Shown one piece after another: positions 6,301 to 55,012 of a stretch of 64,000 nt of DNA. How positions within the stretch are numbered: position 1 is the first letter of the stretch; each line of letters begins with the position of its first letter. Where the stretch lies: positions 7,378,001 through 7,442,000 of the forward strand of contig CATNEN010000029.1 of assembly GCA_950097015.1 (NCBI GenBank), in the 5' to 3' direction. A model generated the notes under the pieces. It saw only the letters and a list, made by a program, of their open reading frames with translations, searched no databases and was not told where the DNA came from. Both the position numbers and the translations under genes were made by a program. This stretch comes from Macrostomum hystrix (Eukaryota > Animalia > Platyhelminthes).

Positions 6301-8164
6301 GCCACACCTACAAATCACATATTACATACTATATTTACGACACTGCCTTATTATAGCACCTCAATTACAAAGCTACATTTTCGGGCCCTAAACACCTCAC
6401 CTCAATTTCCAAATCTTACTTTCAAGGCCAGACTACAATTGCCATTACACAATTGCCACACCACAATGGTCATACCACAATTGCCACACCACAATGGCGC
6501 CTCTCTTTCACCCCTCCAATTAGTCTATGGTCCGCTGCAGCCGCTACCTGAACGAGCTGCTGCCGCACCACGCTAGCCGCATTGTCGGGGTTCTCCTGGT
6601 TGGCGCGCGCGATCCGGAGCCTCAGCTGCGAGCCAGCAGCCTCAGCTGCCTGGCCGAACTGTGCGCCAAGCAGCGCTGGTGGTGCCTGGACAGACCCTCG
6701 ATTGGACTGCAGGTGAGAATTTAATTCAATGTAGCTTTCCCACATCCCACATGGGTACATCCCACATTTTCCCGCGAACTAAATGTTAGAACATACTTAT
6801 TATCCCTTTTCCCAACTATATTCGTCACACCACTATTCCCACACTACAATACCCACATTACAATACCCACACTACGATTCCCACACCACTTTTCCCACAG
6901 TAAAATTCCCACACGAATCTGCATAAAACTATAATTCCAACGCTACAATTCCCACACTACAATTCCCTCACTAAAATTCCCACACTAAAATTCCCACACT
7001 ACAATTCCCACCTACAATTCCCACCTACAATTCCCACACTACAATTCCCACGCTAAAATTCCCACACTACAATCCTCACACTACAATTCCCACACTACAA
7101 TCCTCACACTATAATTCCCACACTACAATCCTCACACTACAATTCCCACACTACAATCCTCACACTATAATTCCCACACTACAATCCTCACTCTATAATT
7201 CCCACACTACAATCCTCACACTACAATTCCCACACTACAATCCTCACTCTATAATTCCCACACTACAATTCCCACACTACAATCCTCACACTACAATTCC
7301 CACACTACAATCCTCACACTATAATTCCCACACTACAATTCCCACACTACAATTCCCACACTAAAATTCCCACACTACAATTCCCACCTACAATTCCCAC
7401 CTACAATTCCCACACTACAATTCCCACGCTAAAATTCCCACACTACAATCCTCACACTACAATTCCCACACTACAATCCTCACACTATAATTCCCACACT
7501 ACAATCCTCACTCTATAATTCCCACACTACAATCCTCACACTATAATTCCCACACTACAATCCTCACTCTATAATTCCCACACTACAATTCCCACACTAC
7601 AATCCTCACACTATAATTCCCACACTACAATCCTCACTCTATAATTCCCACACTACAATTCCCACACTACAATCCTCACACTATAATTCCCACACTACAA
7701 TCCTCACTCTATAATTCCCACACTACAATTCCCACACTACAATCCTCACACTATAATTCCCACACTACAATCCTCACACTACAATTCCCACACTACAATT
7801 CCCACACTTCAATCCCCACACTCAAATTCCCGCACCCCACTAGGAGATTCTCTCCTGCGCCTGCTCCCTTCTCCGGTCGGATCCGGATCCGCTGCCCAGG
7901 CGAGCGTCGGCCCACCTCCTCGGCCACCTGGTCCGCGGCTGCGACCGGCTTAGCCTCGCCAGCCTGCCAGCCGCCTGCCTGACTGAACTGCACCGAGCGC
8001 TTCGCCTAGCCGCAGCAGCTGAGCGAGACCAATCGGTGCTGGAGTATGTTCAGCTGGCGCTTGAGGAGCTGGACAGCTGCGTGCGAGACGCTCTGTTTCC
8101 CAGCGTTAGCGGCACCGCTCCGATGCGAAAGCGGATTTGGGTGCTAGACTCGCCTTCGGACTAG
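312..8164 (+). CDS. TANGO6: Transport and Golgi organization protein 6 homolog, 7 exons: join(312..626,2565..3007,3348..4311,4661..5401,5909..6259,6524..6712,7844..8164), about 1107 aa
   Basis: Phase-consistent GT-AG exons read by hand. Motifs match recalled TANGO6: LGLRPCLSPGVG, WLVRAASRLLSEQLLRRPDGV, ELRLRIGE, GARDPEPQLRASSLSCLAELC, and C-terminal VQLALEELDSCVRDALFP...KRIWVL. The exon 3 donor (4311) and the true start are less certain. Confidence 0.9.
640..2520. repeat. 33-bp minisatellite (GGAGTGGAGAGTGACAAGCCATAGAATCACACA), about 55 copies, TANGO6 intron 1
   Basis: Direct reading; it produces the spurious 11-aa periodic ORFs. Confidence 0.97.
3781..3930 (+). repeat. In-frame 15-bp repeat (GTCACCAAAGATGAC) x9 plus degenerate copies, encoding (VTKDD)9 in TANGO6 exon 3
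   Basis: Direct reading; the frame stays open through the array. Confidence 0.9.
4420..4590. repeat. Degenerate 21-bp repeat (ATCAGGATTTGAGATTCGGAT), TANGO6 intron 3
   Basis: Direct reading. Confidence 0.75.
5575..5725 (-). mobile_element. SINE-like fragment (AAATGGGTACC core) with an internal 17-bp-arm palindrome
   Basis: The minus strand reads CAGTTGACCCTGCAAATAAATGGGTACCAG, resembling the core at 16900-16926. Confidence 0.45.
6820..7830. repeat. 14-bp minisatellite (ACTACAATTCCCAC / ACTACAATCCTCAC), TANGO6 intron 6
   Basis: Direct reading. Confidence 0.95.
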
Positions 8165-9650: not shown

Positions 9651-9780
9651 ATGGAAAAATCGATAGGAAAAATGCCCCGTTTAGAAATGTGCGCTAAAAA
9701 AGTTGGCTGAGCCAATAATTTTGCAAGAAACTTTCTCATATTTTTAAATAGTTGTAAATGCAGTCATTGATACTTTCCAG

Positions 9781-11480
9781 GGATCAGATGCTCAGCTGCT
9801 GCTGCTGCTGCTGCTGCTGACGCCGCTGTCGGTGATTGGCGCGCGGGAGCTGAACTGCAGCTCCGTAGCTGCAGCGCCGGCAGCCGCAGAGCTGACCGCC
9901 GGGTCGCAGCTCCGGCTGCGGCTGAGCGCTAGTGGAGGCAGCGGCAGCTCTTGCCACTCGCTGATCAGCATCAACGTCAGCAGCTCCCGCAGTGCCGGCT
10001 CATATTTCTACGTGAGGCTGGTCGGTCGCCTGGAGTCTCCGCTCTCCGTGCTGAGCCTCAGTCCAGGCCTTGGCAGCTCGCCAGCAGCCGTGGTGACGCC
10101 CGCCAACCAGACCTTGTACAGAGCATTCGCGCTGCAGACGTCTGGCAGCTTGTACTGCAGGCTGAGCAGCTGGGACAGCGACAGCTCAGACAGCGTGTGG
10201 CTGGACGTTGAGCTGGTGCTGAGGTGCCCGACGGGTTGGTTGTACAGCAGCGGCCAGTGCTACGGCAGTCCGTGTGCTGAGAACTCGGCTGCCGCATTTC
10301 GCGATGCCGTCATCGGCTGCCGTCAGGTGCTGGCCAACCTGGCCTTCGACTTTGGCGGCGTCGGCGAGCTGGCGGTCGCCGTCAACGCCACTGGCGTCTG
10401 GCCGACCAACCAGACCGCCTGGATCGGCGCGGCCTACAGCGAGTCAGCCTATTATTTTTTAGACGGCGAAGCCTTTCCGTACCCGTAAGTGTGTCCATAT
10501 TATAATAATAATTGCAGCAGGGCCGCGGGCAATGTCACATCATTGTGTGACACACTACACCGTCAGCGAGGAGGCAGTTCTTACCATTTTGCTGACTCCT
10601 GAGCACACGCGCACGCAGATACCGTACCGTACACTGTACACTTTCACTTTGCCTTTGAGGTTGGCCGCCAAATAAATGTGGCCGCCTCGCCGCGGAATCG
10701 AGCTCAGATCCGAGAGGCAAACGTGTTAGCCGCTCTGTCACCCACCCGCTAAGTGTGTCCATTATCCAATGTCACACACCTAATATCCAAGCTATTGCTA
10801 ACGATCCAATTCTTGCTGAAATCTCCAGCGCTCGAAACCAGTGCTCAGGCTCTGGCGAGTGTCGCTGCCTGTCATTCCGCCGCCTCGACAACGCCTTCAA
10901 TTTGGCTGACTGCGGCCAAAGTCTTCCCTATCTGTGCAGCATGTGCGCCCAGCCCTGCTCAACTGAGTCCCCCTCCTCGTTCAGCCTGGACGGACTGGAC
11001 TGGGAGGTCCGTCAACGCAACAGAACCACCACCACAGCCGCCAAAGGCGCGACGCCTGAAATAAAAGGCCGAACAAATTATTTTCTCATATTTCTCATGA
11101 TTGGCATGTGTGTCACCAGCTTCATTCTCATCTATTGGTTTCGTCGCGACGTTTTTGGGTCGCTGCGACGTCCTCGCCTATCAGGGATTTTTAACAATTT
11201 CCGACTTAGATTCAGAGCTTCAGCAACAGCGGCCGAGTCGTCGGCCACCCCTAACTGCTCGCCTAACAGTCGCGTTGGCATGGCAACCGTTGTTGACGCT
11301 TCCCGATGGGACGCGCCGCCGCCCTATTCAGAGGTGGTGCCTGGGGCAGCTCCGGCCTCCATTGAACTGGCTGTCCACAGCTCTGAAGGCGATGCTGAAG
11401 TGCAGCCTCCACCGTCTTACGATGTGGCAATAGCCACTGCTGCTGCTGCTGATGCTGATGCTGATGGCGCCCATTTGTGA
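9781..11480 (+). CDS. Receptor paralog 1 (signal peptide, CUB-like domain, C-type lectin-like domain, TM, PY tail): join(<9781..10484,10829..11480); no in-frame ATG found
   Basis: Poly-Leu signal segment; CPTGW...CY, WIG and YLCS motifs; TM YFLIFLMIGMCVTSFILIYWF; tail PPPY and PPSY. Phase-2 intron CC|GTAAGT...CTCCAG|C. Confidence 0.82.
10500..10752 (-). mobile_element. tRNA-derived SINE-like copy (family A), internally deleted, filling most of the paralog 1 intron
   Basis: The reverse complement shares GTTTGCCTCTCG, TCGATTCCGCGGCGAGGC, GGTATCTG.GTG and ATGATGTG.CATT with 35560-35950 and 29190-29550, and has an (ATT)n tail. Confidence 0.7.
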
Positions 11481-11984
11481 TCAATAACCCCATTTTTTAA
11501 TTATCAAATTCAACGCAAGGATACAGGCTGTCATTGTTTTATGCGCTCCACTTTTTCTGCTGTTTTTTTCTTTTCTAGTTTTTCTTTCAAAGCAGGTTGC
11601 TAATTGTGACTCAAAAGTGTTTACCCTTCTTTCCTCGATCTTGTTTTTGAAAGGCACGATGTTTCTTCTGTTTTTTTATTGCCTAAAATCTATTAGCATT
11701 TTCAGATTATAACTGTGGCCTTCATTTTATGTATTTTGTCCATATCTAACTATATGACGAAGTTAATCTATTGGAGTTTTTCAGACTTTTTTTATCATTG
11801 CACTACCTTCTACGAGCGTATATCTGGCATAAATTAACTTGAAGAAAAGTTGACAATCTGTTTAAATTAGTCTTACTTTTTTGCTTTGTTTCAAGATCAG
11901 ACTTGTCAGTCTGCTATTATCCTATTCCCAAATCCCTAATCCCTTATCAATCGCCCTTATACCTTCTTGATCATTTGTATCCTT

Positions 11985-13230
11985 TTTATGATTCTTATCC
12001 CTTCTCAGTCATTCTTATCGCTTCCCAATCATTCTTATCCCTTCTCAGTCATTCTTATCGCTTCCCAATCATTCTTATCCCTTCTTGATCATTCTTATCG
12101 CTTCTTATCCCTTCTCAATCATTCTTATCCCTTCTCAGTCATTCTTATCCCTTCTCAATCATTCTTATCCCTTCTCAGTCATTCTTATCCCTTCTCAATC
12201 ATTCTTATCCCTTCTCAATCATTCTTATCCCTTCTTGATCATTCTTATCGCTTCTTATCCCTTCTCAATCATTCTTATCCCTTCTCAGTCATTCTTATCC
12301 CTTCTCAATCATTCTTATCCCTTCTCAGTCATTCTTATCCCTTCTCAATCATTCTTATCCCTTCTCAATCATTCTTATCCCTTCTTGATCATTCTTATCG
12401 CTTCTTATCCCTTCTCAATCATTCTTATCCCTTCTCAGTCATTCTTATCCCTTCTCAATCATTCTTATCCCTTCTCAATCATTCTTATCCCTTCTCAGTC
12501 ATTCTTATCCCTTCTCAGTCATTCTTATCCCTTCTCAATCATTCTTATCCCTTCTCAATCATTCTTATCCCTTCTTGATCATTCTTATCGCTTCTTATCC
12601 CTTCTCAATCATTCTTATCCCTTCTCAGTCATTCTTATCCCTTCTCAATCATTCTTATCCCTTCTCAATCATTCTTATCCCTTCTCAATCATTCTTATCC
12701 CTTCTTGATCATTCTTATCGCTTCTTATCCCTTCTCAATCATTCTTATCCCTTCTCAGTCATTCTTATCCCTTCTCAATCATTCTTATCCCTTCTCAATC
12801 ATTCTTATCCCTTCTCAATCATTCTTATCCCTTCTTGATCATTCTTATCGCTTCTTATCCCTTCTCAATCATTCTTATCCCTTCTCAGTCATTCTTATCC
12901 CTTCTCAGTCATTCTTATCCCTTCTCAATCATTCTTATCCCTTCTCAGTCATTCTTATCCCTTCTCAATCATTCTTATCCCTTCTCAGTCATTCTTATCC
13001 CTTCTCAGTCATTCTTATCCCTTCTCAATCATTCTTATCCCTTCTCAGTCATTCTTATCCCTTCTCAGTCATTCTTATCCCTTCTCAATCATTCTTATCC
13101 CTTCTTGATCATTCTTATCGCTTCTTATCCCTTCTCAATCATTCTTATCCCTTCTCAATCATTCTTATCCCTTCTTGATCATTCTTATCGCTTCTTAATC
13201 ATTCTTATCGCTTCTTATCCCTTCCCACCT
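11985..13230. repeat. 20-bp minisatellite (TCATTCTTATCCCTTCTCAR) with 10-bp variants
   Basis: Direct reading. Confidence 0.97.
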
Positions 13231-13477
13231 ATTCCTATCCTTTCCAGACATTCCTGTCTCTTCCTAACTACAATTATCACTTACCTTCCCAATTATTCCT
13301 TTCCCTTTGCAAATCACCGTTATCCCTTCACGATCGTCCCTATCCTTCGCCAGTAACAATTTCCCTTTACAATCATACTTAACCGCCTGGCAATTGAAAA
13401 CTATTGAGCTGAAATTGCCAACCACAGCATTAAAATTTTCATGAGCAGCCTAGTCCAAACTTTCAGCCTTCTGAAAC

Positions 13478-15208
13478 ATGGCTGCACTGCTATCCCTGCT
13501 ACCCCTGCTGTTTTCCATCGCTGTCGCGGAGCCATTTGTCTACAACTGCAGCAGCGAGTCAAGCTCAGCCATAAACTCGTACTTTCCCAGTGAGAAGCGG
13601 TTCGCTCTGCGGCTGACAACCGGCGGTTCTATTCGCAGCTGTTCCGCCCAGTTCATTAACATCCGCCTTGCTTCCGCCTATTTTTACATCCGCGTCAATG
13701 GCAGCCTCTCGTGGCCCAACTCGCTGCTGAGCCTTAGCAGCTCCGGGTCCACCAGCGAACCTCTCGCCAGCCTGACTAAATCCAACCAGACTGTCTACCA
13801 GGCGTTCGCCACTCCAGGCGCCAGCCTCTACGCTAAACTGTCCTCATCTTCCAGCGAGTCAATTCTGCTGGACATTGAAACCGTACACGGCTGTCCGTCC
13901 TGGTGGGTCTCCTACGGCAAGGAGTGCTACGGCTCCGTTCTGCCCGGCGTCGTCTCGCGAAGCTTTGAAAATGCCGCCGCCGCCTGCAAGATGGTGCGAG
14001 CCAACCTGGCTTTGAGCTTCGCATCGCCGGCTGTGTTGGGCTTTGCTGTTAGAAATTCAGGCTGGTCCAACAGCGAGCCTGTCTGGATTGGCGCCGCTGA
14101 CACCTCTTCTGGGTTGTACTTCCTTGATGGCAGCAAGTTCTCAGTCAGGTGAGACAGCTCACAGGGTGTGTAATCCTTTCAGGTGAGACAGCTCACAGGG
14201 TGTGTAATCCTTTCTCAGTCAGGTGAGACAGCTCACAGGGTGTGTAATCCTTTCTCAGTCAGGTGAGACAGCTAACAGGGTGTGTAATCCTTTCTCAGTC
14301 AGGTGAGACAGCTCACAGGGTGTGTAATCCTTTCAGGTGAGACAGCTCACAGGGTGTGTAATCCTTTCTCAGTCAGGTGAGACAGCTCACAGGGTGTGTA
14401 ATCCTTTCAGGTGAGACAGCTCACAGGGTGTGTAATCCTTTCTCAGTCAGGTGAGACAGCTCACAGGGTGTGTAATCCTTTCTCAGTCAGGTGAGACAGC
14501 TCACAGGGTGTGTAATCCTTTCTCAGTTTGGTAGCTTATAGGGGTCTAATCTCATAGCCAAATGAGATCCCACACTTAACTGGGATCTGATCAAAATTTC
14601 TACAGCTCCAGCAGCAGATTGACTTTCTCCGGGTCGAGTGCCAGCAAGTACAGCTGCGAAACTGGCAGCTGCCGCTGTGTGTACTATCGCGCCGGCTCGT
14701 ACTACAGACAGTACTGTAGCCAGTACATGCGCTACCTGTGCAGCAACAGAATTGGCGGCGACGAGTTGTATTACAGTCTGGACACGCTGGACGCTCTGCT
14801 GGATAGCCAGACCACCTTCGTCTATCCGTACTGGGCCATCAGCCTGATCATCGGTTTCATCTGCCTCGTGGTGGTTGTCAGCACACGCCTGGTGTTCTAT
14901 CATCGCGCCGTCATGGCTCAGAGGAGTCGGAGCGCAGCCGCCATCAATGCCGCCGCCAGGTCGGGCCCGGCTCCGCCACCCGGCAGCTACCCGGTGCAGC
15001 CACCGCCGTCGGCCTATCAAAACTTGGCCTTCTATCATCCCGCAGCTGGCGGGCTGGAACAGCCACTGCCGCCAGCATACCAGGCCCGGCCTGAGCAGCA
15101 GCAGCAGCCTCAGCAGCTACCGCTGGCGCTAGTTGGAGCAACTGGCCAAAATGAAGACGATGACGAGAAGCCGCCGCCGTACGATTTTGCGACAGCTCCG
15201 CTAACATC

Positions 15209-15242
<34 letters not shown>
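13478..15242 (+). CDS. Receptor paralog 2: join(13478..14148,14606..15242), about 435 aa
   Basis: Signal peptide MAALLSLLPLLFSIAVA; CPSWW...CY, WIG, YLCS; TM YWAISLIIGFICLVVVV; PPGSY and PPPY tail ending in polyQ. Phase-2 intron. Confidence 0.87.
14139..14526. repeat. 40/34-bp tandem repeat containing the splice donor (CAG|GTGAGACAGCTCACAGGGTGTGTAATCCTTT[CTCAGT]), 10 copies
   Basis: GT positions at 14149, 14183, 14223, 14263, 14303, 14337, 14377, 14411, 14451 and 14491. Confidence 0.95.
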
Positions 15243-15245
15243 CAA

Positions 15246-15287
<42 letters not shown>

Positions 15288-15306
15288 TAACAGCAGCAGC
15301 AACAGC
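15210..15306 (+). repeat. (CAG/CAA)n microsatellite spanning the paralog 2 stop, interrupted by two in-frame TAA
   Basis: Direct reading. Confidence 0.9.
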
Positions 15307-15784
15307 GTTATTGAAGTAATTGGAGTGATAATAAAAGACAGTTTTGTTTGATGTATTAAAAGTTTTAAACTTACAAATCAGCTAAAAAAATACTAGTATC
15401 ACAGCATGGAGCTCGTTACTTTTTAAATTGCATTATTAGTTTCTTAGTTTTTTATTTTCTGCCTTTTTATTATCATTTATTAAAAAAAAATTTTTAAATA
15501 ACATTTTTTTACTTCAGACAAATTCGATTTAAATTTAGCTAAACTATACAAAGCTGTGTCACTTTGCAAAAAAGTGCTGAACCATTGCTCTTAGTTAGAA
15601 TTCAGTTTTCCCCAATGAGTATTCTTGTATGGTCAAGCCATCTACATACTGCCTTATTATGCTATGTGTATAAAAATATATTTATCTGGTTTCTTTTGTG
15701 TATTGTACAGTAGCTGCAAACAAACAAAACAGCTTATAAAATTTGTACTCTCTGCCACATTCCTGATAAAAAGAAGTAAAAGTG

Positions 15785-15880
15785 TCATGAACTCGGTCAT
15801 CGTGCGTCATGAGCTTGGCATCGTGTGTCATGAACTTGTTCATTGTGTTTCATGAACTGGGTCATCGTGCATCATGACCG
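15785..15880. repeat. Short array of the 22-bp TCATCGTGTGTCATGAACTTGG family
   Basis: Same unit as 20040-21260. Confidence 0.8.
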
Positions 15881-16096
15881 TGTGACGGTCTTTCATGTCT
15901 TGTTCACTTAGTCACTCTACGTGGAGCAGTCATTCATTCAACAAATCAACAAACGCATCGAAGGAATGAAAAAAGCAAAAGATGGCATCTATCAGAGTTG
16001 CTAAAGCAGCATTTCACATTTATCTACAGCTGGCATCTCACCGCACTTTGCTTTCAGCGCTGCAGCCCGTAGGACCTGTTGGAGTCAGTGGCAGCG

Positions 16097-17934
16097 ATGT
16101 GGCTGCTTGATTCTCCGCTGTTCCTGCTGCTCATCGTGCTCAACACGGCCTCCAGCCGGACTGCGGTGTACAACTGCTCATCGGCGAGTCAGCCGCCCTC
16201 GGTGACAGTCGGGTCCGGCAGCTTCGGGCTCCGGCTTCAGCTGACTGTGGCGAGCCGGCTGTGCCACATTCAGCTGATTGGCGGAGGCAGCGGCTACTTC
16301 TTCGTCAGGCTGAACGGCAGTCTGGCCTCGCGCTACTCGCAGCTGAGCCTGAGCTCCGGCTATCAGGGATCCGCGGTGGCCTCCGTGACCGTCGACAGCC
16401 AGGCGGCCTACCGAGCGTTCGCCACCGAGTCCAGCCGGTTGTACGCATCGCTGAGCAGCAGCTCGGCCAGCACTGAGGACAGCATGCTGCTGACTGTGCA
16501 GCTGGTCAGCCAGTGTCCCAGCGGCTGGGCCGTCAGCTCCGGCAGGTGCTACGGCGCGACCTCCGTCAGCGGCGCTGCGGTCAGCTTTTCCGATGCCGTG
16601 ACTGCGTGCAAGTACGTCAGGGCCAACCTGGCCTTGGGCTTCTCGGACGTCAACGCCACGCTTGGCTCTGCGATGCGGCTGGCGGGCTGGCCACAGGATC
16701 GCACCGTCTGGGTCGGGGCGGCCGTCCGGGCTAATGGGGCCGCTTATTTTCTCAACTACGCCATGTTCTCACATTCTATGTGAGTAGCTCTGTTTGCCTA
16801 CTGTTTTATGGTATGCTTTGCACTGAGGGAGTGGTTAGAGCTTTTGACTTCTAATGAAAGGTTGTGGGTTCGAATCTCAACTTGAATCCCCCGGATTCGG
16901 TTCACCCAGCTGTAAAATGGGTACCAGATTATCTAACAGAATATCATTGTCTAACATTTTGTCTAAGAAAATATCGTATCTAACAGATTAACTAACATGC
17001 TATCATGTCTAACAGATTGTCTAACAGAATATCTTGTCTAACAGATTATCTAACATGATACCATGTCTAACAGATTATCAAACAGGATATCATGTCTGAC
17101 AGATTATCTAACATAATATCATTTCTAACAGATTATCTAACAGAATACCATGTTTAGCAGATTATATAACAGATTATCATGTCTAACAGATTGTCTAACA
17201 GAATATCGTATCTAACAGATTATCTAACAGGCTATCGTGTTTAACAGATTATCTAACATAATATCATTTCTAACAGATTATCTAACATAATATCATTTCT
17301 AACAGATTATCTAACATAATATCATTTCTAACAGATTATCTAACAGGATATCATGTCTAACAGATTAGTAGATTATTAGTAGATAATAGATTAGTATATC
17401 TCTAATCTACCCTATTATTATCCAACTGAAGCCCCTCACTCCCCATCCCGCAGTTCCGCCAGCAACCGGCAGTCATGCGCGGGCCTTTCCACGCGAGACT
17501 GCCGCTGCCTGACCTACAACGGCGAGTTCAGCATAGAGCCGTGCTCAGCCCAACTGTCCTATCTGTGCAGCTGCAACATCGGTGGTGACTATAAGTTCTA
17601 TTCGCTGTTCAGACGGCGATCGCACAGGACCAACCGCGCCCGGGTGATCGCCGCCGTTGTCCTGACTATTGCTGCCGCCTCCGCTGTGGTCAGTTTTAGC
17701 GCGAAACTACGCGAGAAACTTCTTGCCAGGCGGTCTGTCGTCGCTGCCGCCGATGTCAGGCCTGTTGCTATGGTAACGCTGAATCACAACGCGGAACCGC
17801 CATCGTTGTCTTCTGCCGCTACTGCTGCTACTACTGCAGCGGCGACAGAATTCGAAGCTGATAACTATGACGACCAGTTGCCTAGTTACGAAGAAGCCGT
17901 CACATGTGGCACCAGCGGAGTCGAACCAGACTGA
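16097..17934 (+). CDS. Receptor paralog 3: join(16097..16779,17454..17934), about 387 aa
   Basis: Signal peptide MWLLDSPLFLLLIVLNTASS; CPSGW...CY, WVG, YLCS; TM VIAAVVLTIAAASAVVSFSA; tail LPSYEEAV. Phase-2 intron AT|GTGAGT...CCCGCAG|T. Confidence 0.85.
16820..16926 (+). mobile_element. tRNA-derived SINE-like fragment in the paralog 3 intron
   Basis: A-box-like GAGTGGTTAGAG, B-box GGTTCGAATC, then CACCCAGCTGTAAAATGGGTACC, a core motif recalled from many metazoan SINEs. No complete tRNA cloverleaf seen. Confidence 0.6.
16927..17390. repeat. About 29-bp minisatellite (CTAACAGATTATCTAACATAATATCATKT)
   Basis: Direct reading. Confidence 0.88.
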
Positions 17935-18509
17935 TGCCGCGAAAGCAGACTGCTGAAAGATCTTGCAGTTCAGGGTTTTTGTTTTTTAGTTTCTTAGCTT
18001 TTACTTAAAGGACCTTATTTTGTAATAAAATGTATTTGTCTATCACAGGCGTGCTTGATTTTGTTATTCTATCTGTCTGCCTTTTTCAGATTTTGCCTTT
18101 CAGTGTTGTGCCTTACTGTGATTTATCAAGAAGCAAGCAGCATATTTTAACAGATTGTTGTTTTTATACAATTTTATTTGTTAAAGAATTTCATATATTG
18201 TCTTTTTCTATCGATGAATCTTGCCAAATTGTATATTTGTTTTACTGAACTTTTTGCAGCCAAAAGGTCTCATAATTGGAGCCTATACAGTGCAATAGAA
18301 TTCGTCTATTTTGAGTGTCTCAAAATTTCCTTTCTTTTTTACCCATTTATTCTACTATCAATTGAAAAAAATTGTCGCTGTGAAAATTTAGCAAGAGATT
18401 AAAAAATTACTTTAAATCCGTGCTCCTTTCTTTTACCTGCAACATAGAAAATAGAATAGAAATGAAACATGACCCATTTAGGCCACTGTACACTGTAGTT
18501 CTCCAGTTT

Positions 18510-19445
18510 CCCCGTGGTTTCCCCTGGTTTCCCTTGGTTTCCCTTGGTTTCCCCTCGGTTTCCCCTTGTTGTCATGTGGTTTCCCTCGGTTTCCCTTGGT
18601 TTTCCTTGGTTTCCCTTCGGTTTCCCCTTGGTGTCATATGGATTCCCCTTGGTGTCATATGGATTCCCCCTGGTGTCATATGGTTTCCCCTTGGTGTCAT
18701 ATGGTTTTCCCTTGGTGTCATATGGATTCCCCCTGGTGTCATATGGTTTCCCCTTGGTGTCATATGGTTTTCCCTTGGTGTCATATGGATTCCCCTTGGT
18801 GTCATATGGATTCCCCCTGGTGTCATATGGTTTCCCCTTGGTGTCATATGGTTTCCCCTTGGTGTCATATGGTTTCCCCTTGGTGTCATATGGTTTTCCC
18901 TTGGTGTCATATGGTTTCCCCTTGGTGTCATATGGATTCCCCCTGGTGTCATATGGATTCCCCTTGGTGTCATATGGATTCCCCCTGGTGTCATATGGTT
19001 TCCCCTTGGTGTCATATGGTTTTCCCTTGGTGTCATATGGTTTTCCCTTGGTGTCATATGGATTCCCCCTGGTGTCATATGGTTTCCCCTTGGTGTCATA
19101 TGGTTTTCCCTTGGTGTCATATGGATTCCCCTTGGTGTCATATGGATTCCCCCTGGTGTCATATGGTTTCCCCTTGGTGTCATATGGTTTTCCCTTGGTG
19201 TCAAATGGATTCCCCTTGGTGTCATATGGTTTCCCCTTGGTGTCATATGGTTTCCCCTTGGTGTCATATGGTTTCCCCTTGGTGTCATATGGTTTCCCCT
19301 TGGTATCATATGGTTTCCCCTTGGTATCATATGGTTTCCCCTTGGTGTCATATGGTTTTCCCTTGGTGTCATATGGTTTTCCCTTGGTGTCATATGGATT
19401 CCCCTTGGTGTCATATGGTTTCCCCTTGGTGTCATATGGTTTCCC
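18510..19445. repeat. 21-bp minisatellite (GGTTTCCCCTTGGTGTCATAT)
   Basis: Direct reading. Confidence 0.97.
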
Positions 19446-19449
19446 CATA

Positions 19450-19715
19450 TGACGGGATGGATTAATGACCAACAACAATGACGGGATTGATTATTGACCA
19501 ACAACAATGACGGGATTGATTATTGACCAACAACAATGACGGGATTGATTAATGACCAACAACAATGACGGGATTGATTATTGACCAACAACAATGACGG
19601 GATTGATTAATGACCAACAACAATGACGGGATTGATTAATGACCAACGACAATGACGGAATTGATTAATGACCAACGACAATGACGGAATTGATTAATGA
19701 CCAACGACAATGACC
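19450..19715. repeat. 29-bp minisatellite (ACAATGACGGGATTGATTAATGACCAACA)
   Basis: Direct reading; related to 22885-23225. Confidence 0.92.
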
Positions 19716-20039
19716 GGATCATTTCGATATGAATTTAGCCGAGTGCTTTAATTTTAAAGTTAAGCGAAAGGTTAAAACGACACAGATGTGATTTGAAATA
19801 ACAACCTGTCAGTCAGGTATATTATTTTAGAGATTGCATAATAACATAGAGTAGCTTTATTTTACCATTTTAAGGACTTTATCAAGCAAAAAAATCGTTT
19901 CGTTATTTTTCTTTTGTTCCAAGCTAGTTACTAATTTTTAAGCACTTTTTAAGTCGTTCAGTTTTTTGTCAAAGGCGCGGCCTTGGATACTTCCAATTTC
20001 GCTCAATTAATTAAAGCAGTTTATAAAAAGATAATCCTA

Positions 20040-21260
20040 ATCGTGTGTCATGAACTGGGTCATCGTGTGTCATTAACTTGGTCATCGTGTGTCATGAACT
20101 GGGTCATCGTGTGTCATTAATTTGGTCATCGTGTGTCATGAACTGGGTCATCGTGTGTCATAAATTTGGTCATCGTGTGTCATTAACTTGGTCATCGTGT
20201 GTCATGAACTGGGTCATCGTGTGTCATGAACTGGGTCATCGTGTGTCATGAACTTGGTAATCGTGTGTCATGAACTTGGTCATCGTGTGTCATGAACTTG
20301 GTCATCGTGTGTCATAAACTTGGTCATCGTGTGTCATGAACTGGGTCATCGTGTGTCATGAACTTGGTCATCGTGTGTCATGAACTTGGTCATCGTGTGT
20401 CATAAATTTGGTCATCGTGTGTCATGAACTGGGTCATCGTTTGTCATTAACTTGGTGATCGTGTGTCATTAACATGGTCATCGTGTGTCATTAACTTGGT
20501 GATCGTGTGTCATTAACTTGGTCATCGTGTGTCATAAATTTGGTCATCGTGTGTCATGAACTTGGTCATCGTGTGTCATTAACTTGGTTATCGTGTGTCA
20601 TTAACTTGGTCATCGTGTGTCATGAACTGGGTCATCGTGTGTCATTAACTTGGTGATCGTGTGTCATAAATTTGGTCATCGTGTGTCATGAACTTGGTCA
20701 TCGTGTGTCATGAACTTGGTCATCGTGTGTCATTAACTTGGTGATCGTGTGTCATTAACTTGGTGATCGTGTGTCATTAACTTGGTGATCGTGTGCCATT
20801 AACTTGGTCATCGTGTGTCATTAACTTGGTGATCGTGTGTCATTAACTTGGTCATCCTGTGTCATTAACTTGGTGATCGTGTGTCATTAACTTGGTCATC
20901 CTGTATCATTAACTTGGTGATCGTGTGTCATTAACTTGGTCATCGTGTGTCATTAACTTGGTGATCGTGTGTCATTAACTTGGTCATCGTGTGTCATGAA
21001 CTTGGTCATCGTGTGTCATTAACTGGGTCATCGTGTGTCATGAACTTGGTCATCGTGTGTCATGAACTTGGTCATCGTGTGTCATGAACTTGGTCATCGT
21101 GTGTCATAAATTTGGTCATCGTGTGTCATGAACTGGGTCATCGTGTGTCATGAACTTGGTCATCGTGTGTCATGAACTTGGTCATCGTGTTTCATAAATT
21201 TGGTCATCGTGTGTCATGAACTGGGTCATCGTGTCATGAACTTGGTCATCGTGTGTCATG
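20040..21260. repeat. 22-bp minisatellite (TCATCGTGTGTCATGAACTTGG), about 55 copies
   Basis: Direct reading. Confidence 0.97.
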
Positions 21261-21373
21261 GTTATATTTTAGATTCCCCTTAGGCTGAAAAAACTCAGCA
21301 AGAACTAAGGCGCTTCTATTTCATGATTCATAATTAGATAATTTCGACTATCAAATCATTCCAGTCACACAGC

Positions 21374-22873
21374 ATGCGATCAAGAATGATGCATCAGCTG
21401 CTGCCCTGTTTGCTGCTGCTGCTTATTCCCAGATCAGCAATGTGTCAAGTCCGACACAGCTGCGGCAGTAACTCAAGCAGCCCGCCCAAAGTGACCTTAG
21501 GCGCCGTGCCAACACGATTTATTCTAGACCTGTCAATCACCAACGGCACAGACTGCCACATCAGAGTTAGCGGCTCCGCTGGAATGTACTTTTACATCCG
21601 GCTCAACAGCAGTCTGGAGATGGCAACCTCCGTGCTCATCTTGAGCTCCGATTTCGGACCGACTGGCGCCCCAGTCGGCTTGGTGACGAAATCCAACCAG
21701 ACTGTCTATCGGGCCTTCGCTACTACTGGCAGTAGCATGTACGCCCGCCTGACTGGCGGCTTTCCGGACAATGTCTCGCTGGAGGTCGAGCTCCTGTCCA
21801 GCACTAGCGCTTGCCCGACTGGCTGGAAGCTCAGCGGCGGCCTCTGCTACGGCGCTGCGCATCCGAGCAACTCGCCGGCAGCTTTCGCCGACGCCTCCGC
21901 CGGTTGTCGCTACGTGCGGGCCAATCTTGCTCTTCGCTTCACCGATGGCTCGGCAGCGCTGAGGGACGCCGTCCTGGCCGCTGGCTGGTCTGCCACCGAG
22001 CCAGTGTGGGTTGGTGTGGCGGACAGCAGCAAAGGCCTGTACTTTCTAGATGCATACGGATTCTTCTATAGGTGAGGCTGCCGCTGCCTCTTCCTCACAC
22101 CTGTTTCTTACCTGCACTCTACTATGACCTTCCCTAACCTCTACAATGACCTTCCCTACCCTCTACAATGACCTTCCCTACCCTTTACAATGACCTTCCC
22201 TACCCTCTACAATGTCATTCCCTACCCTCTACAATGACCTTCTCTACCCTCTACAATGACCTTCCCTACATTGTCCCTTAGATTCTGAAAGAAAATTCTA
22301 ATCGTCTTGAATTTCAGGTCCAGCAGCTCCGTGAAATTCTTCGCCTCAGGGTCTTACACGTGCGCAACCGGCAACTGTCGCTGTGTGTACACCATGGGCG
22401 GCGACTCATTCTACAGGCATTACTGCGTGCAGGCTTTGGTATATCTGTGCAGCAGAAAGCCAGGTGGTGACACCGCTTTCTACAGCCTGGAGACACTGGA
22501 CAAATCTGTGGGAGTTGCCACCACTGTTGTCTTCAGCCAGTACTGGATCATCGGCCTGATTGTCGGATTGATCTGTCTCGTAGTTGGCACCACCATTCGA
22601 GTCATCTGGTACCGTCGCGCTAGGGCGACTTCAAGAAGCCAGCAGGCCGCACTAGCCACCTACACTATGACCGATGACGGCGGAACAGCTTCCTACCTGC
22701 CCGCCGCGGTGCCAGTCAGCACTCACCTGACAGCTCCACCCGGCAGCTATCCGACCCAGCCTACCGGAGCCTATTATCAACCCGGCGCCGATGCCGACGA
22801 AGTCAAACCGCCGAACTACGACGAAGCGATTGCGCCGCCTGCCTACGATGCGGCCACGAATGGCGAGCATTGA
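21374..22873 (+). CDS. Receptor paralog 4: join(21374..22071,22318..22873), about 417 aa
   Basis: Signal peptide HQLLPCLLLLLIPRSAMC; CPTGW...CY, WVG, YLCS; TM YWIIGLIVGLICLVVGTTI; tail PPGSY, PPNY, PPAY. Phase-2 intron. Confidence 0.87.
22125..22270. repeat. 22-bp minisatellite (CTACAATGACCTTCCCTACCCT), paralog 4 intron
   Basis: Direct reading. Confidence 0.88.
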
Positions 22874-22884
22874 GTTGGGGATAA

Positions 22885-23225
22885 AGGACCAGGGGACAAT
22901 GACGGGACTGATGAAGGATCAGGGACAATGACGGGACTGATGAAGGACCAGGGACAATGACGGGACTGATGAAGGACCAGGGACAATGACGGGACTGATG
23001 AAGGACCAGGGACAATGACGGGACTGATGAAGGACCAGGTAGAATGACGGGACTGATGAAGGACCAGGGGGCAATGACGGGACTGATGAAGGACCAGGGA
23101 CAATGACGGGACTGATGAAGGACCAGGGGACAATGACGGGACTGATGAAGGACCAGGGACAATGACGGGACTGATGAAGGACCAGGGACAATGACGGGAC
23201 TGATAGGGGTGCCATGACGGGACTG
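22885..23225. repeat. 29-bp minisatellite (ACAATGACGGGACTGATGAAGGACCAGGG) directly after the paralog 4 stop
   Basis: Direct reading. Confidence 0.93.
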
Positions 23226-23834
23226 TTAAATGAGAATTTTTATGCTTTTGAAAGGATTTTTTTCGATTTGTTGTCAGCTGTTTCATGCCAAACAACTATT
23301 CAGTTTCAAGGTGGCTTTAACTGTCTAAATATACGATACTTTATGGATGTGTTCTTAGCGTTCTTGAATGCCATAACAATGAATACTCAAAACTTTTTGT
23401 TCTGCTTTGTAATTGCCTGTGATATAATCGATTTCTACAGCTAAACATGTATTGCTTGTCTGTTTTACGTAAATTGTACATACTTTATATAATATTTTCA
23501 GTTAGATGCCCTAACCATTCGATTCTCATCGAAGGAAAGAAGGAATTCAGGAAATATTTTTTTAATTTTCGTTTTTTGCTACGTTTAGTAGTGACTGATT
23601 TAAAGCGTTTTCGGAATGAATGAAATCTAATTTGTGGACTAAAACAAAGAAGACAATTTTCTTCCATTGTATTTTCTTAGCCAATCAATGTCTTCGGCAT
23701 TCCATTTTTTGTTTTATATATTTTTTCGATGCTTTTTTCTTTAAATAAAACAATACTTTCTTAGAAACTTAGTTTTTAACTTGCTTCTTTTTATTTGAAG
23801 AACTGGCAACATCACTTTGACTATTTACTCTTCT

Positions 23835-24490
23835 CTTTCCTTCCTTTACCCTCTTTCTCCACTACCTACCCACTTTCTCCACTCCTTACCCTCTTTCTCC
23901 ACTCCATACCCTCTTTCTCCACTCCCTAACCTCTTTCTCCACTCCCTACCCTCTTTCTCAACACCACACCCTCTTTTTCCACTCCCTACCCTCTTTCTCC
24001 ACTCCCTACCCTCTTTCTCAACACCACACCCTCTTTTTCCACTCCCTACCCTCTTTCTCAACACCACACCCTCTTTTTCCACTCCCTACCCTCTTTCTCA
24101 ACACCACACCCTCTTTTTCCACTCCCTACCCTCTTTCTCAACACCACACCCTCTTTCTCCACTCCCTACCCTCTTTCTCAACACCACACCCTCTTTTTCC
24201 ACTCCCTACCCTCTTTCTCCACTCCCTACCCTCTTTCTCCACTCCCTACCCTCTTTCTCAACACCACACCCTCTTTCTCCACTCCCTACCCTCTTTCTCA
24301 ACACCACACCCTCTTTCTCCACTCCCTACCCTCTTTCTCAACACCACACCCTCTTTCTCCACTCCCTACCCTCTTTCACCACTCCTTACCCTCTTTCTCC
24401 ACTCCCTACCCTCTCTCTCCACTCCCTACCCTCTTTCTCCACTCCCTACCCTCTTTCTCCACTCCCTACCCTCTTTCTCCACTCCCTACC
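23835..24490. repeat. 20-bp pyrimidine-rich minisatellite (CCCTCTTTCTCCACTCCCTA / CCCTCTTTCTCAACACCACA)
   Basis: Direct reading. Confidence 0.95.
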
Positions 24491-24579
24491 TTCGTTTTCC
24501 CTTCCATACGATTTTTCTCCACACCTTACTCTTCATTTTAACGCTATCTTTTTTTCCTTATTTTCAGCGCATTCACGGT

Positions 24580-26323
24580 ATGATCGCGTGTTTCGAGTCC
24601 CTGTTGCTATTAGCAACCGCATTACTAAGCTGTCCGGCTAGCGGCTGTCTAAACAGCCAATTAGATCTAGCCGGATGGCAAGAAAATGTCACAATTTCGG
24701 TCGCCGCCAATCAGAGCTGCGCCAGTGTCACGATTGTCGCTAAATCCTTCTACAGCGGCTTGCTGGTCACAGTCGGCCGGCTGAATTCGTCCTCCGGCTT
24801 CGGCGCTCGGCTGACCCTCGCCGAATCGTCCGGTCCGCAGATATTGAATTTGACAGCGTCGTCGACTTCAGCGCCGCGTCAGGCCGTCCTGGGCGTCGAC
24901 GATGGTCGGTTCTGGGCCAGCCTAGCCAAGCTGAATTCGGATTCCTCGACTGCCTACGCCCAGCTGACTGTGCGGCCAATCGAAATGAGCGCCTGCCCGC
25001 ACGGCTGGTCCAAGGGCACTTACAGATCCAATACCGTCTGCTACGGCGTCCCGGTTGTCAATGGTTACGCTAGCTTTGCCGACTCGGCCAGGCTGTGCAA
25101 ATTGGTGCGGGCAAATGTAGCTATCGATTTTTCTACTAGTCAATACTACTTGGACAGCGCCATTAGAAAACGTGACTGGGTTGGCCTTAGCGGGCCGTAC
25201 TGGGTTGGCCTGATGGACTACAACGGCAAGATGTATTACATAACTGGCGAGCCTTACTATCAGAGGTGAGTGCGGAAATTTTCAGGAATCCCCTGGACTT
25301 TGCAATAAACCGCTCAGGGGTACTACCCTTTGGCTTTTCGGAAATTCACTTGGCAATTTATCTACAAAAAAATCCACTGGCCAATTTTCTAAGAAACGCA
25401 CTGATTCGATCTTCTAAGAAAGCTACAGGAAAATCTTCTAAAACACCCACTGGCAGATATTCTAAGAAACCCACTGGCAGATATTCTAAGAAACCCACTG
25501 GCATATATTCTAAGAAACCCACTGGCAGATATTCTAAGACACACTGGCAGATATTCTAAGAAACCCACTGGCAGATATTCTAAGAAACCCACTGGCAGAT
25601 ATTCTAAGAAACCCACTGACAGATATTCTACGAAACACACACCAATGGATGTTTAAGAAATCCCCTCTATCCCTAGAGAAACTTATTTGCTCCACACAGA
25701 AACCCACTGGCTCCCCACAGAAACCCATTATTTTTATATTCGAGCTTGTATTCGAATGATACGCCATAACCGCATGCAATGTCTGCGTAACTGCTATTCC
25801 GCTCAGCAAACCGTCCAGCTTCCGGCTGTCAGTCTCTTGTTCATCATCCGGCTCATGCAAATGCGTATTATACGAAGGAGGCTATTTCTATCTGGACAAT
25901 TGCGCCAGCCGGGTGGCTTATCCGCTGTGCTCAGCCCCAATTGGCGGTGTCATAAATGATGATAACTACTATAATCCGTCCAGCATTTCGGCCTACATCA
26001 GGCGCTGGTCTTTAACAAGCAATAGCGGCAATTCGCTGCTACTGTGGCGCAACTATTGGCCAGCTATAGCCGTGGCCGCATTCCTCACCGTGGGACTCTC
26101 TGTGGCATTTAGAATATTTTATCGGATGCGAGCTGCTCGCGCTATTAATAACCGTCGACTGGCCTTGACCACTAGCGCGATTCAGCAGCAGCAGCAGCAG
26201 CAGCCGCCACCTGGCTCCTATCCGATTCAGACCGGCAACAACACGAACGACCTGACTGTGTGGCAGCAGCCGCAGACCATGACTTATCAGCCGCCGCAGC
26301 CGCCGCCTTACACTGTCTACTAA
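24580..26323 (+). CDS. Receptor paralog 5 (most divergent): join(24580..25265,25807..26323), about 400 aa
   Basis: Signal peptide MIACFESLLLLATALLSCPASG; CPHGW...CY, WVGL, CSSSGSCKCVLY, YPLCS; TM YWPAIAVAAFLTVGLSVAF; tail PPGSY and PPPY. Same phase-2 intron position. Confidence 0.83.
25435..25640. repeat. 24-bp minisatellite (AAGAAACCCACTGGCAGATATTCT), paralog 5 intron
   Basis: Direct reading. Confidence 0.9.
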
Positions 26324-26584
26324 AATTCTAGCTATCAGTGCGATGCCCCGCCAGCTTTGGCTGGTGCTGTTGCGCCAGAAGTTCCGGCTGATCAGGCCAG
26401 CCAGGCTAAAGTGAACCCACCTGAAATCAATGATTGACAGCTGAGCTCTTGGATACCGATTTTATAAATTCTGGCAACTTTTTTCGAGAATTATCCGAGA
26501 ATTATCTCTATTCTTCATATTCCTTATTCACGAAATGAAATCAATTCAACGAATTCCTAGTTCACTTAGCCTACAGCTCATCGA

Positions 26585-31965: not shown

Positions 31966-32110
31966 ATCCATCCTCCACTTAACCTTCCTACCCCACTTAA
32001 CCTTCCTGTACACTGGTTTAATGTACCCATTTGACTCACTATCTGTTCTGCACGGATTTATTAAGCTCCAATAAATCACTCTATTGAATTCTTGCAGCCA
32101 GTCAGTCCGA

Positions 32111-53086: not shown

Positions 53087-55012
<1,926 letters not shown>

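What the first reader, a model, noticed from the sequence alone, without database searches (positions are those of the whole stretch)
9781..26437. Tandem array of five divergent CUB-like + C-type-lectin-like single-pass receptors
Seen: five same-strand two-exon genes share a signal peptide, an N-terminal domain of about 120 aa, a long-form CTLD, a TM helix and a PY-motif tail. Each has a phase-2 intron at the same point inside the CTLD. The paralogs are clearly homologous yet strongly diverged. Known: CTLD and CUB domains mediate glycan or protein recognition, and diversified tandem arrays are typical of innate immune or chemosensory receptors. Inference: this is a lineage-specific receptor family, possibly for microbe or self recognition, adhesion or mating, which I cannot match to a named family.
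Basis: partly seen in the sequence, partly recalled or inferred. Interest (0 to 1): 0.85.

Follow-up and report, generated by a model that had tools for sequence, protein, structure and literature searches.

The report
Flatworm CUB plus lectin-fold receptor array
Five neighbouring genes of a Macrostomum flatworm encode fast-evolving single-pass membrane receptors that combine two common binding folds in an arrangement not described before; the genes and the array are real and conserved, but the function is unknown.

Summary
Window 9781-26323 (+) carries five paralogous two-exon genes, 26-48% identical in exon 1. Each encodes signal peptide, a 118-130 aa N-domain, a long-form C-type lectin-like domain (CTLD), a TM helix and a tail with [LP]PxY motifs. 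Each has a phase-2 GTRAGT intron at the same CTLD position.

- **RNA:** contigs confirm the g2 and g3 joins exactly and show both mRNAs carry the Macrostomum spliced leader. The g1, g4 and g5 joins were not tested.
- **Folds:** the N-domain is a CUB fold only by predicted structure (Z 12.3; top 23 matches all CUB). Pfam and PDB sequence profiles do not detect it. The CTLD is supported by profile (E 4e-6) and by the fold of a 50%-identical orthologue. It lacks EPN/QPD and WND.
- **Conservation:** M. lignano has the same array, in the same order, behind the same TANGO6-like gene, with 1:1 orthologues annotated as hypothetical. The array is old and stable. Its genes evolve faster than that neighbour (dN 0.42-0.75 vs 0.21; omega 0.31-0.55).

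Most likely these are non-sugar-binding surface receptors regulated through Nedd4-type WW ligases; that function is inferred. The scan had noted the lectin loop and the g2 intron on this same stretch. I rate it a new variant of a known kind, of moderate interest.

The parts
9781..10484 (+). g1 exon 1: signal peptide (no ATG of its own; starts at the in-frame acceptor ttccag|G), CUB-fold domain, and the first two thirds of the CTLD. Ends at donor GTAAGT in phase 2.
   Evidence: The M. lignano orthologue m1 likewise lacks an ATG and starts at an acceptor.
10829..11480 (+). g1 exon 2: CTLD loop and C-terminal strands, stalk, TM (aa 321-339), and a tail with PPPY and PPSY. The acceptor at 10828|10829 is preferred; 10753|10754 is not excluded.
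   Evidence: Not tested by RNA.
13467..14148 (+). g2 exon 1: spliced-leader acceptor at 13466|13467, ATG at 13478, signal peptide to 13528, CUB-fold domain 13529-13891, then the CTLD N part. Donor GTGAGA.
   Evidence: (spliced-leader loose end and join).
14606..15242 (+). g2 exon 2: Ser-rich disulfide-stapled loop, CTLD C part, stalk, TM (about 14829-14900), and a tail with PPPGSYP, PPAY (15069-15080), PPPY (15171-15182) and a polyQ end.
16058..16779 (+). g3 exon 1: spliced-leader acceptor at 16057|16058, ATG at 16097, CUB-fold domain, CTLD N part. Donor GTGAGT.
17454..17934 (+). g3 exon 2: CTLD C part, TM, and a tail with LPSY.
21374..22071 (+). g4 exon 1: signal peptide, CUB-fold domain, CTLD N part. 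Donor GTGAGG.
   Evidence: Join not tested by RNA.
22318..22873 (+). g4 exon 2: CTLD C part, TM, and a tail with PPGSYP, PPNY and PPAY.
24580..25265 (+). g5 exon 1 (the most divergent copy): signal peptide, CUB-fold domain, CTLD N part. Donor GTGAGT.
   Evidence: Join not tested by RNA.
25807..26323 (+). g5 exon 2: CTLD C part, stalk, TM, and a tail with PPPGSYP and a C-terminal PPPY.
3343..8161 (+). Upstream flanking gene, TANGO6-like (RTP1_C1 domain). It serves as the synteny anchor shared with M. lignano and as the rate comparator.

Best explanation
SHOWN:
- The stretch is an ancient, syntenically conserved tandem array of five paralogous genes in a Macrostomum flatworm that is not M. lignano.
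- Each gene has two coding exons. At least g2 and g3 are SL trans-spliced.
- Each encodes a type I single-pass membrane protein with a signal peptide, one CUB-fold domain, one long-form CTLD, a short stalk, a TM helix, and a divergent and in most copies proline-rich (6-17% Pro) cytoplasmic tail that always keeps at least one [LP]PxY motif.
- The CTLD keeps its structural core: C0-C0', C1-C4 and C2-C3 cysteines and W-I/V-G.
- The CTLD has lost the EPN/QPD and WND calcium/sugar motifs. In their place is a Ser-rich loop of 10-21 residues, specific to each paralogue, ending in C-x(4-7)-C-x-C. The conserved intron sits exactly at the start of this loop.

INFERRED:
- The ectodomain binds a protein or other non-glycan ligand through the variable loop face, the CUB domain, or both. 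The five paralogues would then have different, long-fixed specificities.
- The PY motifs recruit WW-domain HECT ligases of the Nedd4 family. Surface level, endocytosis and lysosomal sorting of the receptor, and of whatever it holds, would then be ubiquitin-controlled.
- g1 probably takes its start codon from the AUG that ends the spliced leader.
For: - Gene structure and paralogy.
- RNA joins and spliced leader. The leader sequence matches the 35-nt M. lignano SL given in PMC8629364.
- CTLD: the exon-1 profile hits only CTLDs in the PDB, with the best single-domain E of 4e-6. Pfam Lectin_C scores 19.9-24.1 bits on full-length homologues against a cutoff of 22.6. An AF2 model of a 50%-identical orthologue has pLDDT 87 and matches CTLDs at TM 0.72-0.79.
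- CUB fold: the AF2 model of the window's own g2 N-domain has pLDDT 88. VIA-align top 23 rows are all CUB (Z 8.2-12.3), and the first non-CUB row is at 7.8. The Foldseek top hit is spermadhesin. Atlas CUB clusters match at TM 0.70-0.80.
- Topology and PY motifs: present in 14 of 14 family members.
- Loop anatomy.
- Synteny and 1:1 orthology with M. lignano: (bootstrap 97-100).
- Rates.
- ATG-less, acceptor-started N-terminus conserved in g1 and m1.
Against: - No ligand, localisation or expression data exist.
- No WW-ligase interaction was tested. PY motifs arise easily in proline-rich tails, although one near the C-terminus is kept in every member.
- The CUB assignment rests on predicted structure alone. 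Pfam CUB and a PDB profile search find nothing by sequence.
- The whole-ectodomain fold comes from an orthologue, not from a window protein, because spliced window proteins could not be passed to the tools.
- Loss of EPN/WND does not exclude glycan binding by another site.
- The g1, g4 and g5 joins and the SL-donated AUG of g1 have no read support here.
Confidence: 0.6

Rival explanations
1. Innate-immune pattern-recognition receptors. The five paralogues would recognise different microbial surfaces, as proposed for nematode CLEC proteins that combine CTLD and CUB domains.
For: - CTLD plus CUB is the composition of the nearest Atlas clusters, which are nematode C-type lectins (score 0.83, a lead only).
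- The genes evolve two to three and a half times faster at non-synonymous sites than the flanking gene.
- The loop at the canonical ligand site is variable.
Against: - The Ca2+/sugar motifs are absent.
- The array shows no birth-and-death turnover. There are 1:1 orthologues in the same order at dS of about 1.2-1.5.
- Omega is below 1 overall.
- There are no infection-response data.
Confidence: 0.15
2. Reproductive or partner/self-recognition molecules, for example in sperm, the female tract or cell adhesion, in these reciprocally mating hermaphrodites.
For: - The genes diverge quickly between congeners.
- The best structural match of the N-domain is the spermadhesin CUB, a similarity of fold only.
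- The recent M. lignano duplicates m5/m6 have ectodomain omega 0.62 against 0.28 in the tail.
Against: - No tissue-expression evidence is available.
- A fold match to spermadhesin says nothing about function.
- Both genes covered by the laid stretch (g2 and g3) appear in ordinary whole-animal-type RNA assemblies.
Confidence: 0.1
3. Accessory subunits or adaptors rather than ligand receptors. The CUB ectodomain would dock onto another membrane protein, as NETO, SOL-1 and LEV-10 do on ionotropic receptors. The PY tail would bring a Nedd4 ligase to that partner, as NDFIP-type adaptors do.
For: - CUB type I proteins include Neto2 among the structural matches.
- PY tails are conserved.
- An earlier scan note places a divergent iGluR-like gene a few kb upstream of this window. 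This was not checked.
Against: - The argument is purely by analogy.
- The genomic neighbourhood also holds unrelated housekeeping genes: TANGO6-like, LCAT-like and a glycosyltransferase.
- No co-expression data exist.
Confidence: 0.08

Closest known systems
Nematode CLEC proteins combining C-type lectin-like and CUB domains (C. elegans clec family)
   Same: They have the same two domain types in one protein. They are lineage-expanded, often lie in clusters, and many have CTLDs without sugar-binding motifs. They are the nearest Atlas clusters by sequence features (the rest is from general knowledge).
   Different: They are mostly secreted, and their domain number and order vary. Their CUB domains are detectable by Pfam, and they have no TM helix or PY tail. 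There is no detectable orthology: the profile search found the full architecture only in Macrostomum.
Non-calcium CTLD receptors of vertebrates (NKR-P1, CD69, LOX-1, CD23-type folds)
   Same: They are the best structural matches of the CTLD (TM 0.72-0.79). Their CTLDs lack or dispense with the Ca2+ sugar site, bind proteins or other ligands, and belong to cell-surface receptors.
   Different: Those are type II proteins, mostly dimeric through a neck, with no CUB domain and with ITIM, ITAM or other tail motifs. Sequence identity is only 17-20%.
Type I CUB receptors (neuropilins, Kremen, NETO1/2, LRP3/LRP12)
   Same: They are single-pass type I proteins whose membrane-distal CUB domain makes protein-protein contacts. 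They are top structural matches of the N-domain, at Z 10.9-12.2 for neuropilins and Kremen and 8.9 for Neto2.
   Different: They pair CUB with FA58C, kringle/WSC or LDLa domains, never with a CTLD. They keep the sequence signature and usually four cysteines, whereas here only two cysteines are conserved.
Attractin / mahogany
   Same: It is a type I membrane protein that contains both a CUB domain and a CTLD (general knowledge).
   Different: It is a very large protein with EGF, kelch, PSI and laminin-EGF modules between the two domains. It is a single conserved gene, not a diverged array, and has no PY tail. It was not among the sequence or structure hits.
PY-motif single-pass proteins regulated by Nedd4-family ligases (for example CYYR1, Shisa, NDFIP-type adaptors)
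   Same: They have a short proline-rich cytoplasmic tail with PPxY motifs. Pfam CYYR1 hits the TM and tail of P0010 weakly (E 0.013, below cutoff).
   Different: Their ectodomains are unrelated, and the weak hit is probably compositional.

Membership tests
C-type lectin-like domain (CTLD, Pfam PF00059) | Sequence match to the family profile | tested here: inconclusive
   Exon pieces of the window genes give no Pfam hit because the domain is split by the intron. Full-length homologues score 19.9-24.1 bits against a cutoff of 22.6, with two above and two just below. The five-sequence exon-1 profile hits only CTLDs in the PDB, with the best single-domain E of 4e-6.
C-type lectin-like domain (CTLD, Pfam PF00059) | Double-loop alpha/beta fold with two helices | tested here: met
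   The AF2 model of M. lignano orthologue P0001:30-325 (50% identical to g2) has pLDDT 87.3. More than 360 PDB matches reach E<=1e-3. All 50 listed matches are CTLD proteins; the single-CTLD chains among them align at TMt 0.59-0.79. This is a proxy, not a window protein.
C-type lectin-like domain (CTLD, Pfam PF00059) | Conserved cysteines C1-C4 and C2-C3, plus C0-C0' of the long form, and the WIGL motif | tested here: met
   CPxGW...CYG, the alpha-1 cysteine, CxCV, a cysteine 12-15 residues later, and (Y/Q/P)LCS are present in all 11 array genes. W-I/V/L-G is present in all. Disulfide geometry could not be checked because no coordinates were available.
C-type lectins in the strict sense (Ca2+-dependent sugar binding) | EPN or QPD motif plus WND motif at Ca2+ site 2 | tested here: not met
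   Neither motif occurs in any of the 11 array genes. The region is a Ser-rich loop of 10-21 residues with C-x(4-7)-C-x-C. They should therefore be filed as CTLD proteins, not as lectins.
CUB domain (Pfam PF00431) | Ten-stranded beta-sandwich (jelly roll) of about 110 residues | tested here: met
   The model of window 13529-13891 has pLDDT 88.4 and ten strands. VIA-align gives Z 12.3, rmsd 2.3 over 104 residues to spermadhesin. The top 23 rows are all CUB, and the first non-CUB row is at Z 7.8. Foldseek and Atlas agree.
CUB domain (Pfam PF00431) | Sequence match to the family profile | tested here: not met
   There is no Pfam CUB hit in any of 15 N-domains even at E<=10. The N-domain profile finds no CUB in the PDB. 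UniProt's automatic name for one chimeric M. lignano model is 'CUB domain-containing'; its basis is unknown.
CUB domain (Pfam PF00431) | Four conserved cysteines forming two disulfides | tested here: not met
   Only two cysteines are conserved: one invariant near the N-terminus and a second about 30-45 residues later. Their positions fit the first CUB disulfide. The second pair is absent.
CUB domain (Pfam PF00431) | Ca2+ site (Tyr-Glu-Asp-Asp) of the ligand-binding CUB subset | not tested
   This needs a residue-level structural alignment, which the tools did not return.
Nedd4-family WW-domain clients | [LP]PxY motif in a cytosolic segment | tested here: met
   There are one to three motifs in the tail of all 14 family members, usually within 30 residues of the C-terminus.
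Nedd4-family WW-domain clients | Physical binding to WW domains and ubiquitin-dependent turnover | not testable with these tools
   This requires biochemistry.

The most novel reading that the evidence does not exclude
The five paralogues are a Macrostomum-specific set of recognition receptors. Their disulfide-stapled variable loops, at the old sugar-binding site, would give five fixed ligand specificities for partner, self or microbe. Engagement would be read out by Nedd4-type ubiquitination through the PY tail. This would be a receptor system with no counterpart among known CTLD or CUB receptor groups. A more remote variant has them acting as CUB-type auxiliary subunits of the divergent iGluR-like channels encoded nearby.
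Probability: 0.15. Interest if true: 0.65.

Novelty: new variant of a known kind. Interest (0 to 1): 0.38.

Why it matters
CTLD and CUB are among the commonest animal extracellular modules, so the parts are ordinary. The combination is what I did not find described: one CUB fold packed on one sugar-site-less CTLD, on a type I stalk with a PY tail. It is kept as a five-gene array across two diverged Macrostomum species.

It gives flatworm biologists a defined, experimentally tractable receptor family. M. lignano has RNAi, transgenesis and in situ methods, and its orthologues have accession numbers.

It is also an example of a CUB domain that sequence profiles miss but structure prediction finds.

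It corrects several chimeric UniProt gene models.

It adds a clean, conserved candidate case of a start codon donated by the spliced leader to a signal peptide.

It does not bear on any long-standing open question.

Tried and rejected
- **Pfam on the ten exon pieces:** nothing, because the CTLD is split.
- **The search for homologous proteins, three times:** g3 exon 1, whole P0001, and P0001 residues 36-225. These returned nothing beyond the query's own cluster and one chimera. Length limits and low-complexity words are the likely cause, so the family's range across other Macrostomum transcriptomes could not be charted.
- **Spliced window proteins:** they could not be passed to the tools by reference. 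Whole-ectodomain Pfam and folding therefore used M. lignano orthologues as proxies.
- **Rfam on the window:** no hit.
- **Two-domain structural match in the ESM Atlas:** none. Only the CTLD half aligned, with TM by query at most 0.45.
- **Literature searches:** searches for the M. lignano gene identifiers and for CUB + C-type lectin + PPxY found nothing relevant.
- **Retrocopy or DNA artefact as the source of the spliced contigs:** rejected, because the contigs carry the spliced leader.
- **A true TANGO6-g1 fusion gene, as in UniProt A0A1I8GPA1:** rejected. The NCBI annotation of the same M. lignano locus separates the two genes, and the fused model skips the signal peptide.
- **Whole-gene positive selection:** rejected. 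Omega is 0.31-0.55, with dS near saturation, so the values are rough.


Full report
**1. Observation**

ORF listing and stop-to-stop translation show five pairs of open frames on the + strand between 9.7 and 26.4 kb. tblastn of the joined models against the window finds each copy matching the others at 1e-8 to 1e-38. There is no further copy in the 64 kb.

The exon-1 peptides align over their whole length. Identity to g1 is 26-43%, and 27 columns are invariant, including CP.GW, CYG, a helix cysteine, ANLA and W.G.

Each exon-1 frame is closed by a stop that is itself part of a consensus donor: cc|GTAAGT, ag|GTGAGA, ta|GTGAGT, ag|GTGAGG and ag|GTGAGT. All five introns are therefore phase 2 at the same alignment column.

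Acceptors with pyrimidine tracts restore the frame at 14606, 17454, 22318 and 25807. For g1, 10829 is the better site and gives the family's loop pattern, but 10754 is not excluded.

**2. RNA evidence**

Contigs of three runs of one study, plus one run of a second study, carry the g2 join. It is reported as 14145>14603 with a 3-base slide, which is equivalent to 14148|14606. The three runs of the first study carry the g3 join 16779|17454. Both are GT..AG.

The 5' ends of the g2 and g3 contigs run on into ...TGCGAAGACTCAATTTATTGCAT, joined at the AG acceptors 13465-13466 and 16056-16057. This is the 3' part of the 35-nt M. lignano spliced leader printed in PMC8629364. PMC10468722 states that the leader is highly conserved in M. 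cliftonense and M. hystrix and ends in ATG.

The runs are therefore RNA-derived. Both mRNAs are trans-spliced, and both genes use their own ATG (13478 and 16097).

**3. Organism and orthologues**

A profile of the five exon-1 peptides was searched against 1.84 billion representatives. It found eight proteins covering both domains. Everything else hit only the CTLD part.

Seven of the eight are M. lignano entries. They are named 'hypothetical protein', 'C-type lectin domain-containing' or, once, 'CUB domain-containing'. The eighth, P0010, is an unlabelled 2024 RNA assembly.

M. lignano contig NIVC01001008.1 has the following order on one strand: a TANGO6/RTP1_C1 gene, then m1 to m6. The window has the orthologous TANGO6-like gene at 3343-8161, directly upstream of g1.

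A maximum-likelihood tree pairs g1-m1, g2-m2, g3-m3, g4-m4 and g5-(m5,m6) with support of 97-100. The five-gene array therefore predates the split of the two species. Only the g5 type duplicated later, in M. lignano.

All M. lignano copies have the phase-2 intron at the same place. So do two tandem copies of a distant branch (P0097 type) at a second locus, between scramblase and M13 peptidase genes.

Several UniProt models (A0A1I8GPA1, A0A1I8FUP6, A0A1I8FUL8) are chimeras of neighbouring genes.

**4. Rates**

| Comparison | aa identity | dN | dS | omega |
|---|---|---|---|---|
| Array orthologue pairs | 39-52% | 0.42-0.62 (0.75 for g5 vs the extra copy m6) | 1.2-1.5 | 0.31-0.55 |
| TANGO6-like flank | 74% | 0.21 | 0.94 | 0.22 |

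These are Nei-Gojobori estimates. The family evolves fast but is, on average, under purifying selection. dS is near saturation, so the ratios are rough.

The least conserved parts are the stalk, TM and tail. The CTLD core is the most conserved.

**5. Domains**

*CTLD.* The exon-1 profile hits 63 PDB sequences. All 60 listed are CTLD proteins, with DC-SIGNR at 4e-6. Full-length homologues score 19.9-24.1 bits on Pfam Lectin_C, whose cutoff is 22.6.

An AF2 model of P0001:30-325 (50% identical to g2), built with a 23-row alignment, has pLDDT 87.3 and pTM 0.85. Its C-terminal half matches L-SIGN, NKR-P1, CD69, ASGR1 and LOX-1 at TM 0.72-0.79.

The cysteine pattern is that of a long-form CTLD plus one extra pair. 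EPN/QPD and WND are absent in all 11 array genes. The long loop is a Ser-rich segment of 10-21 residues, poorly ordered in the model, ending in C-x(4-7)-C-x-C.

*N-domain.* Pfam and a PDB profile search find nothing. The AF2 model of the window's own g2 residues 18-138 (pLDDT 88.4, ten strands) is a CUB fold:

- VIA-align gives Z 12.3 to spermadhesin, 12.2 to neuropilin-1, 11.8 to TSG-6 and 11.5 to Kremen.
- The first 23 rows are all CUB, and the first non-CUB row is at 7.8.
- The Foldseek top hit is 1spp_B.
- Atlas CUB clusters match at TM 0.70-0.80.

Only two cysteines are conserved.

*Rest of the protein.* All 14 family members have a hydrophobic N-terminal core, a TM segment near residues 290-340 followed in all but m2 directly by basic residues, and one to three [LP]PxY motifs in the tail. 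The g2, g4 and g5 lineages and the P0059 branch also share PPxGSYP.

**6. g1 start**

The g1 frame has no ATG between the preceding stop and the signal peptide. It begins exactly at ttccag|GGA, in frame. The M. lignano orthologue is the same: ctttcag|TCA, no in-frame ATG, with the signal peptide following. NCBI annotates it as a separate, 5'-partial gene.

A leader ending in AUG would give M-G-S-D-A-Q-(L)8..., a normal signal peptide. It is conserved between species but has no read support here.

**7. Mechanism**

The shown and inferred steps are set out in the best explanation above; in brief:

- Shown: architecture, topology signals, conservation, transcription and splicing for g2 and g3, and loss of the sugar-site motifs.
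- Inferred: the proteins sit at the cell surface. They bind non-glycan ligands through the paralogue-specific loop face and/or the CUB domain. Nedd4-family ligases bound to the PY motifs control their abundance and endocytosis.

The high pTM of the two-domain model suggests a fixed CUB-CTLD unit. No two-domain counterpart was found in the Atlas.

**8. Rivals**

- An immune pattern-recognition array is weakened by the missing sugar site, the stable 1:1 orthology and omega below 1.
- A reproductive or recognition role is compatible with the fast divergence but has no expression support.
- An accessory-subunit or adaptor role is pure analogy.

**9. Novelty and score**

The genes exist in public M. 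lignano annotation as hypothetical or domain-labelled proteins. No paper describing them was found.

The parts are common. The architecture and its conservation as an array have not been described. That makes it a new variant of a known kind. It is useful to flatworm biologists and only moderately surprising to a specialist.

Noticed in passing
window 9748-9835; L001 6761-6880: g1 and its M. lignano orthologue both lack an in-frame ATG and start exactly at an in-frame splice acceptor before the signal peptide. This is a conserved candidate for a start codon donated by the AUG at the end of the spliced leader.
   Followed up: partly
window 14138-14527: The g2 intron is filled by about ten copies of a 40-bp unit. 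The unit repeats the last 11 bases of exon 1 plus the GTGAGA donor, which gives many potential donors. RNA contigs show only the first donor joined to the final acceptor (14148|14606).
   Followed up: partly
window 16925-17367, 22117-22269, 25370-25640: The g3, g4 and g5 introns each hold their own unrelated tandem repeat (29 bp x15, 22 bp x7, 24 bp x10). The homologous intron of M. lignano m1 is only 75 bp.
   Followed up: no
window 11939-13215, 15782-15906, 18515-19719, 20040-21260, 22880-23204, 23847-24522, 26591-27500: Every intergenic spacer of the array is mostly satellite. The same 22-bp unit (containing GTCATGAACTTGGTC) occurs both at 15784-15877 and as a 1.2-kb array at 20040-21260. 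Long ORFs across these repeats are artefacts.
   Followed up: no
window 3343-8161: A TANGO6-like (RTP1_C1) gene lies upstream. The window has an intron of about 1.1 kb (6713-7843) where the M. lignano orthologue is contiguous (L001 6012-6515).
   Followed up: no
M. lignano proteins P0002, P0003, P0009 (UniProt A0A1I8GPA1, A0A1I8FUP6, A0A1I8FUL8): These public gene models are chimeras that join the tail of one array gene, or of TANGO6, to the body of the next.
   Followed up: partly
L002 15860-22648: M. lignano has a sixth array member (m6). It is a recent duplicate of the g5 type (77% identical to m5) with a 5.4-kb intron. The window has no counterpart.
   Followed up: partly
L005 10001-16296: A second family locus in M. 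lignano holds two tandem copies of the distant P0097 type. The public annotation merges them into one gene span. The phase-2 intron position is the same.
   Followed up: partly
window 13467-13480 and 16058-16072: In g2 the leader's AUG is out of frame with the gene's own ATG, which lies 11 nt downstream. In g3 it opens a 4-codon upstream ORF. So the leader's AUG is not used by these two genes.
   Followed up: no
window 9795-9819 and 15209-15306: There are coding trinucleotide repeats. (GCT)8 encodes the Leu run of the g1 signal peptide. A CAG-type repeat (reported by TRF with unit GCA) encodes the polyQ C-terminus of g2 and runs into its 3' UTR. RNA contigs break there.
   Followed up: no
window 32084-33858 (+), 37185-37847 (+), 54110-55012 (-), 61703-63079 (+): The downstream neighbours are ordinary genes: an LCAT-family acyltransferase, a DXD glycosyltransferase, a pyridine-nucleotide disulfide oxidoreductase and a C2H2 zinc-finger protein.
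   Followed up: partly
window 43000-50200: A block of about 7 kb has extreme GC skew (+0.64) and overlapping minus-strand ORFs of up to 1775 aa. It is most likely a long satellite, not a gene.
   Followed up: no
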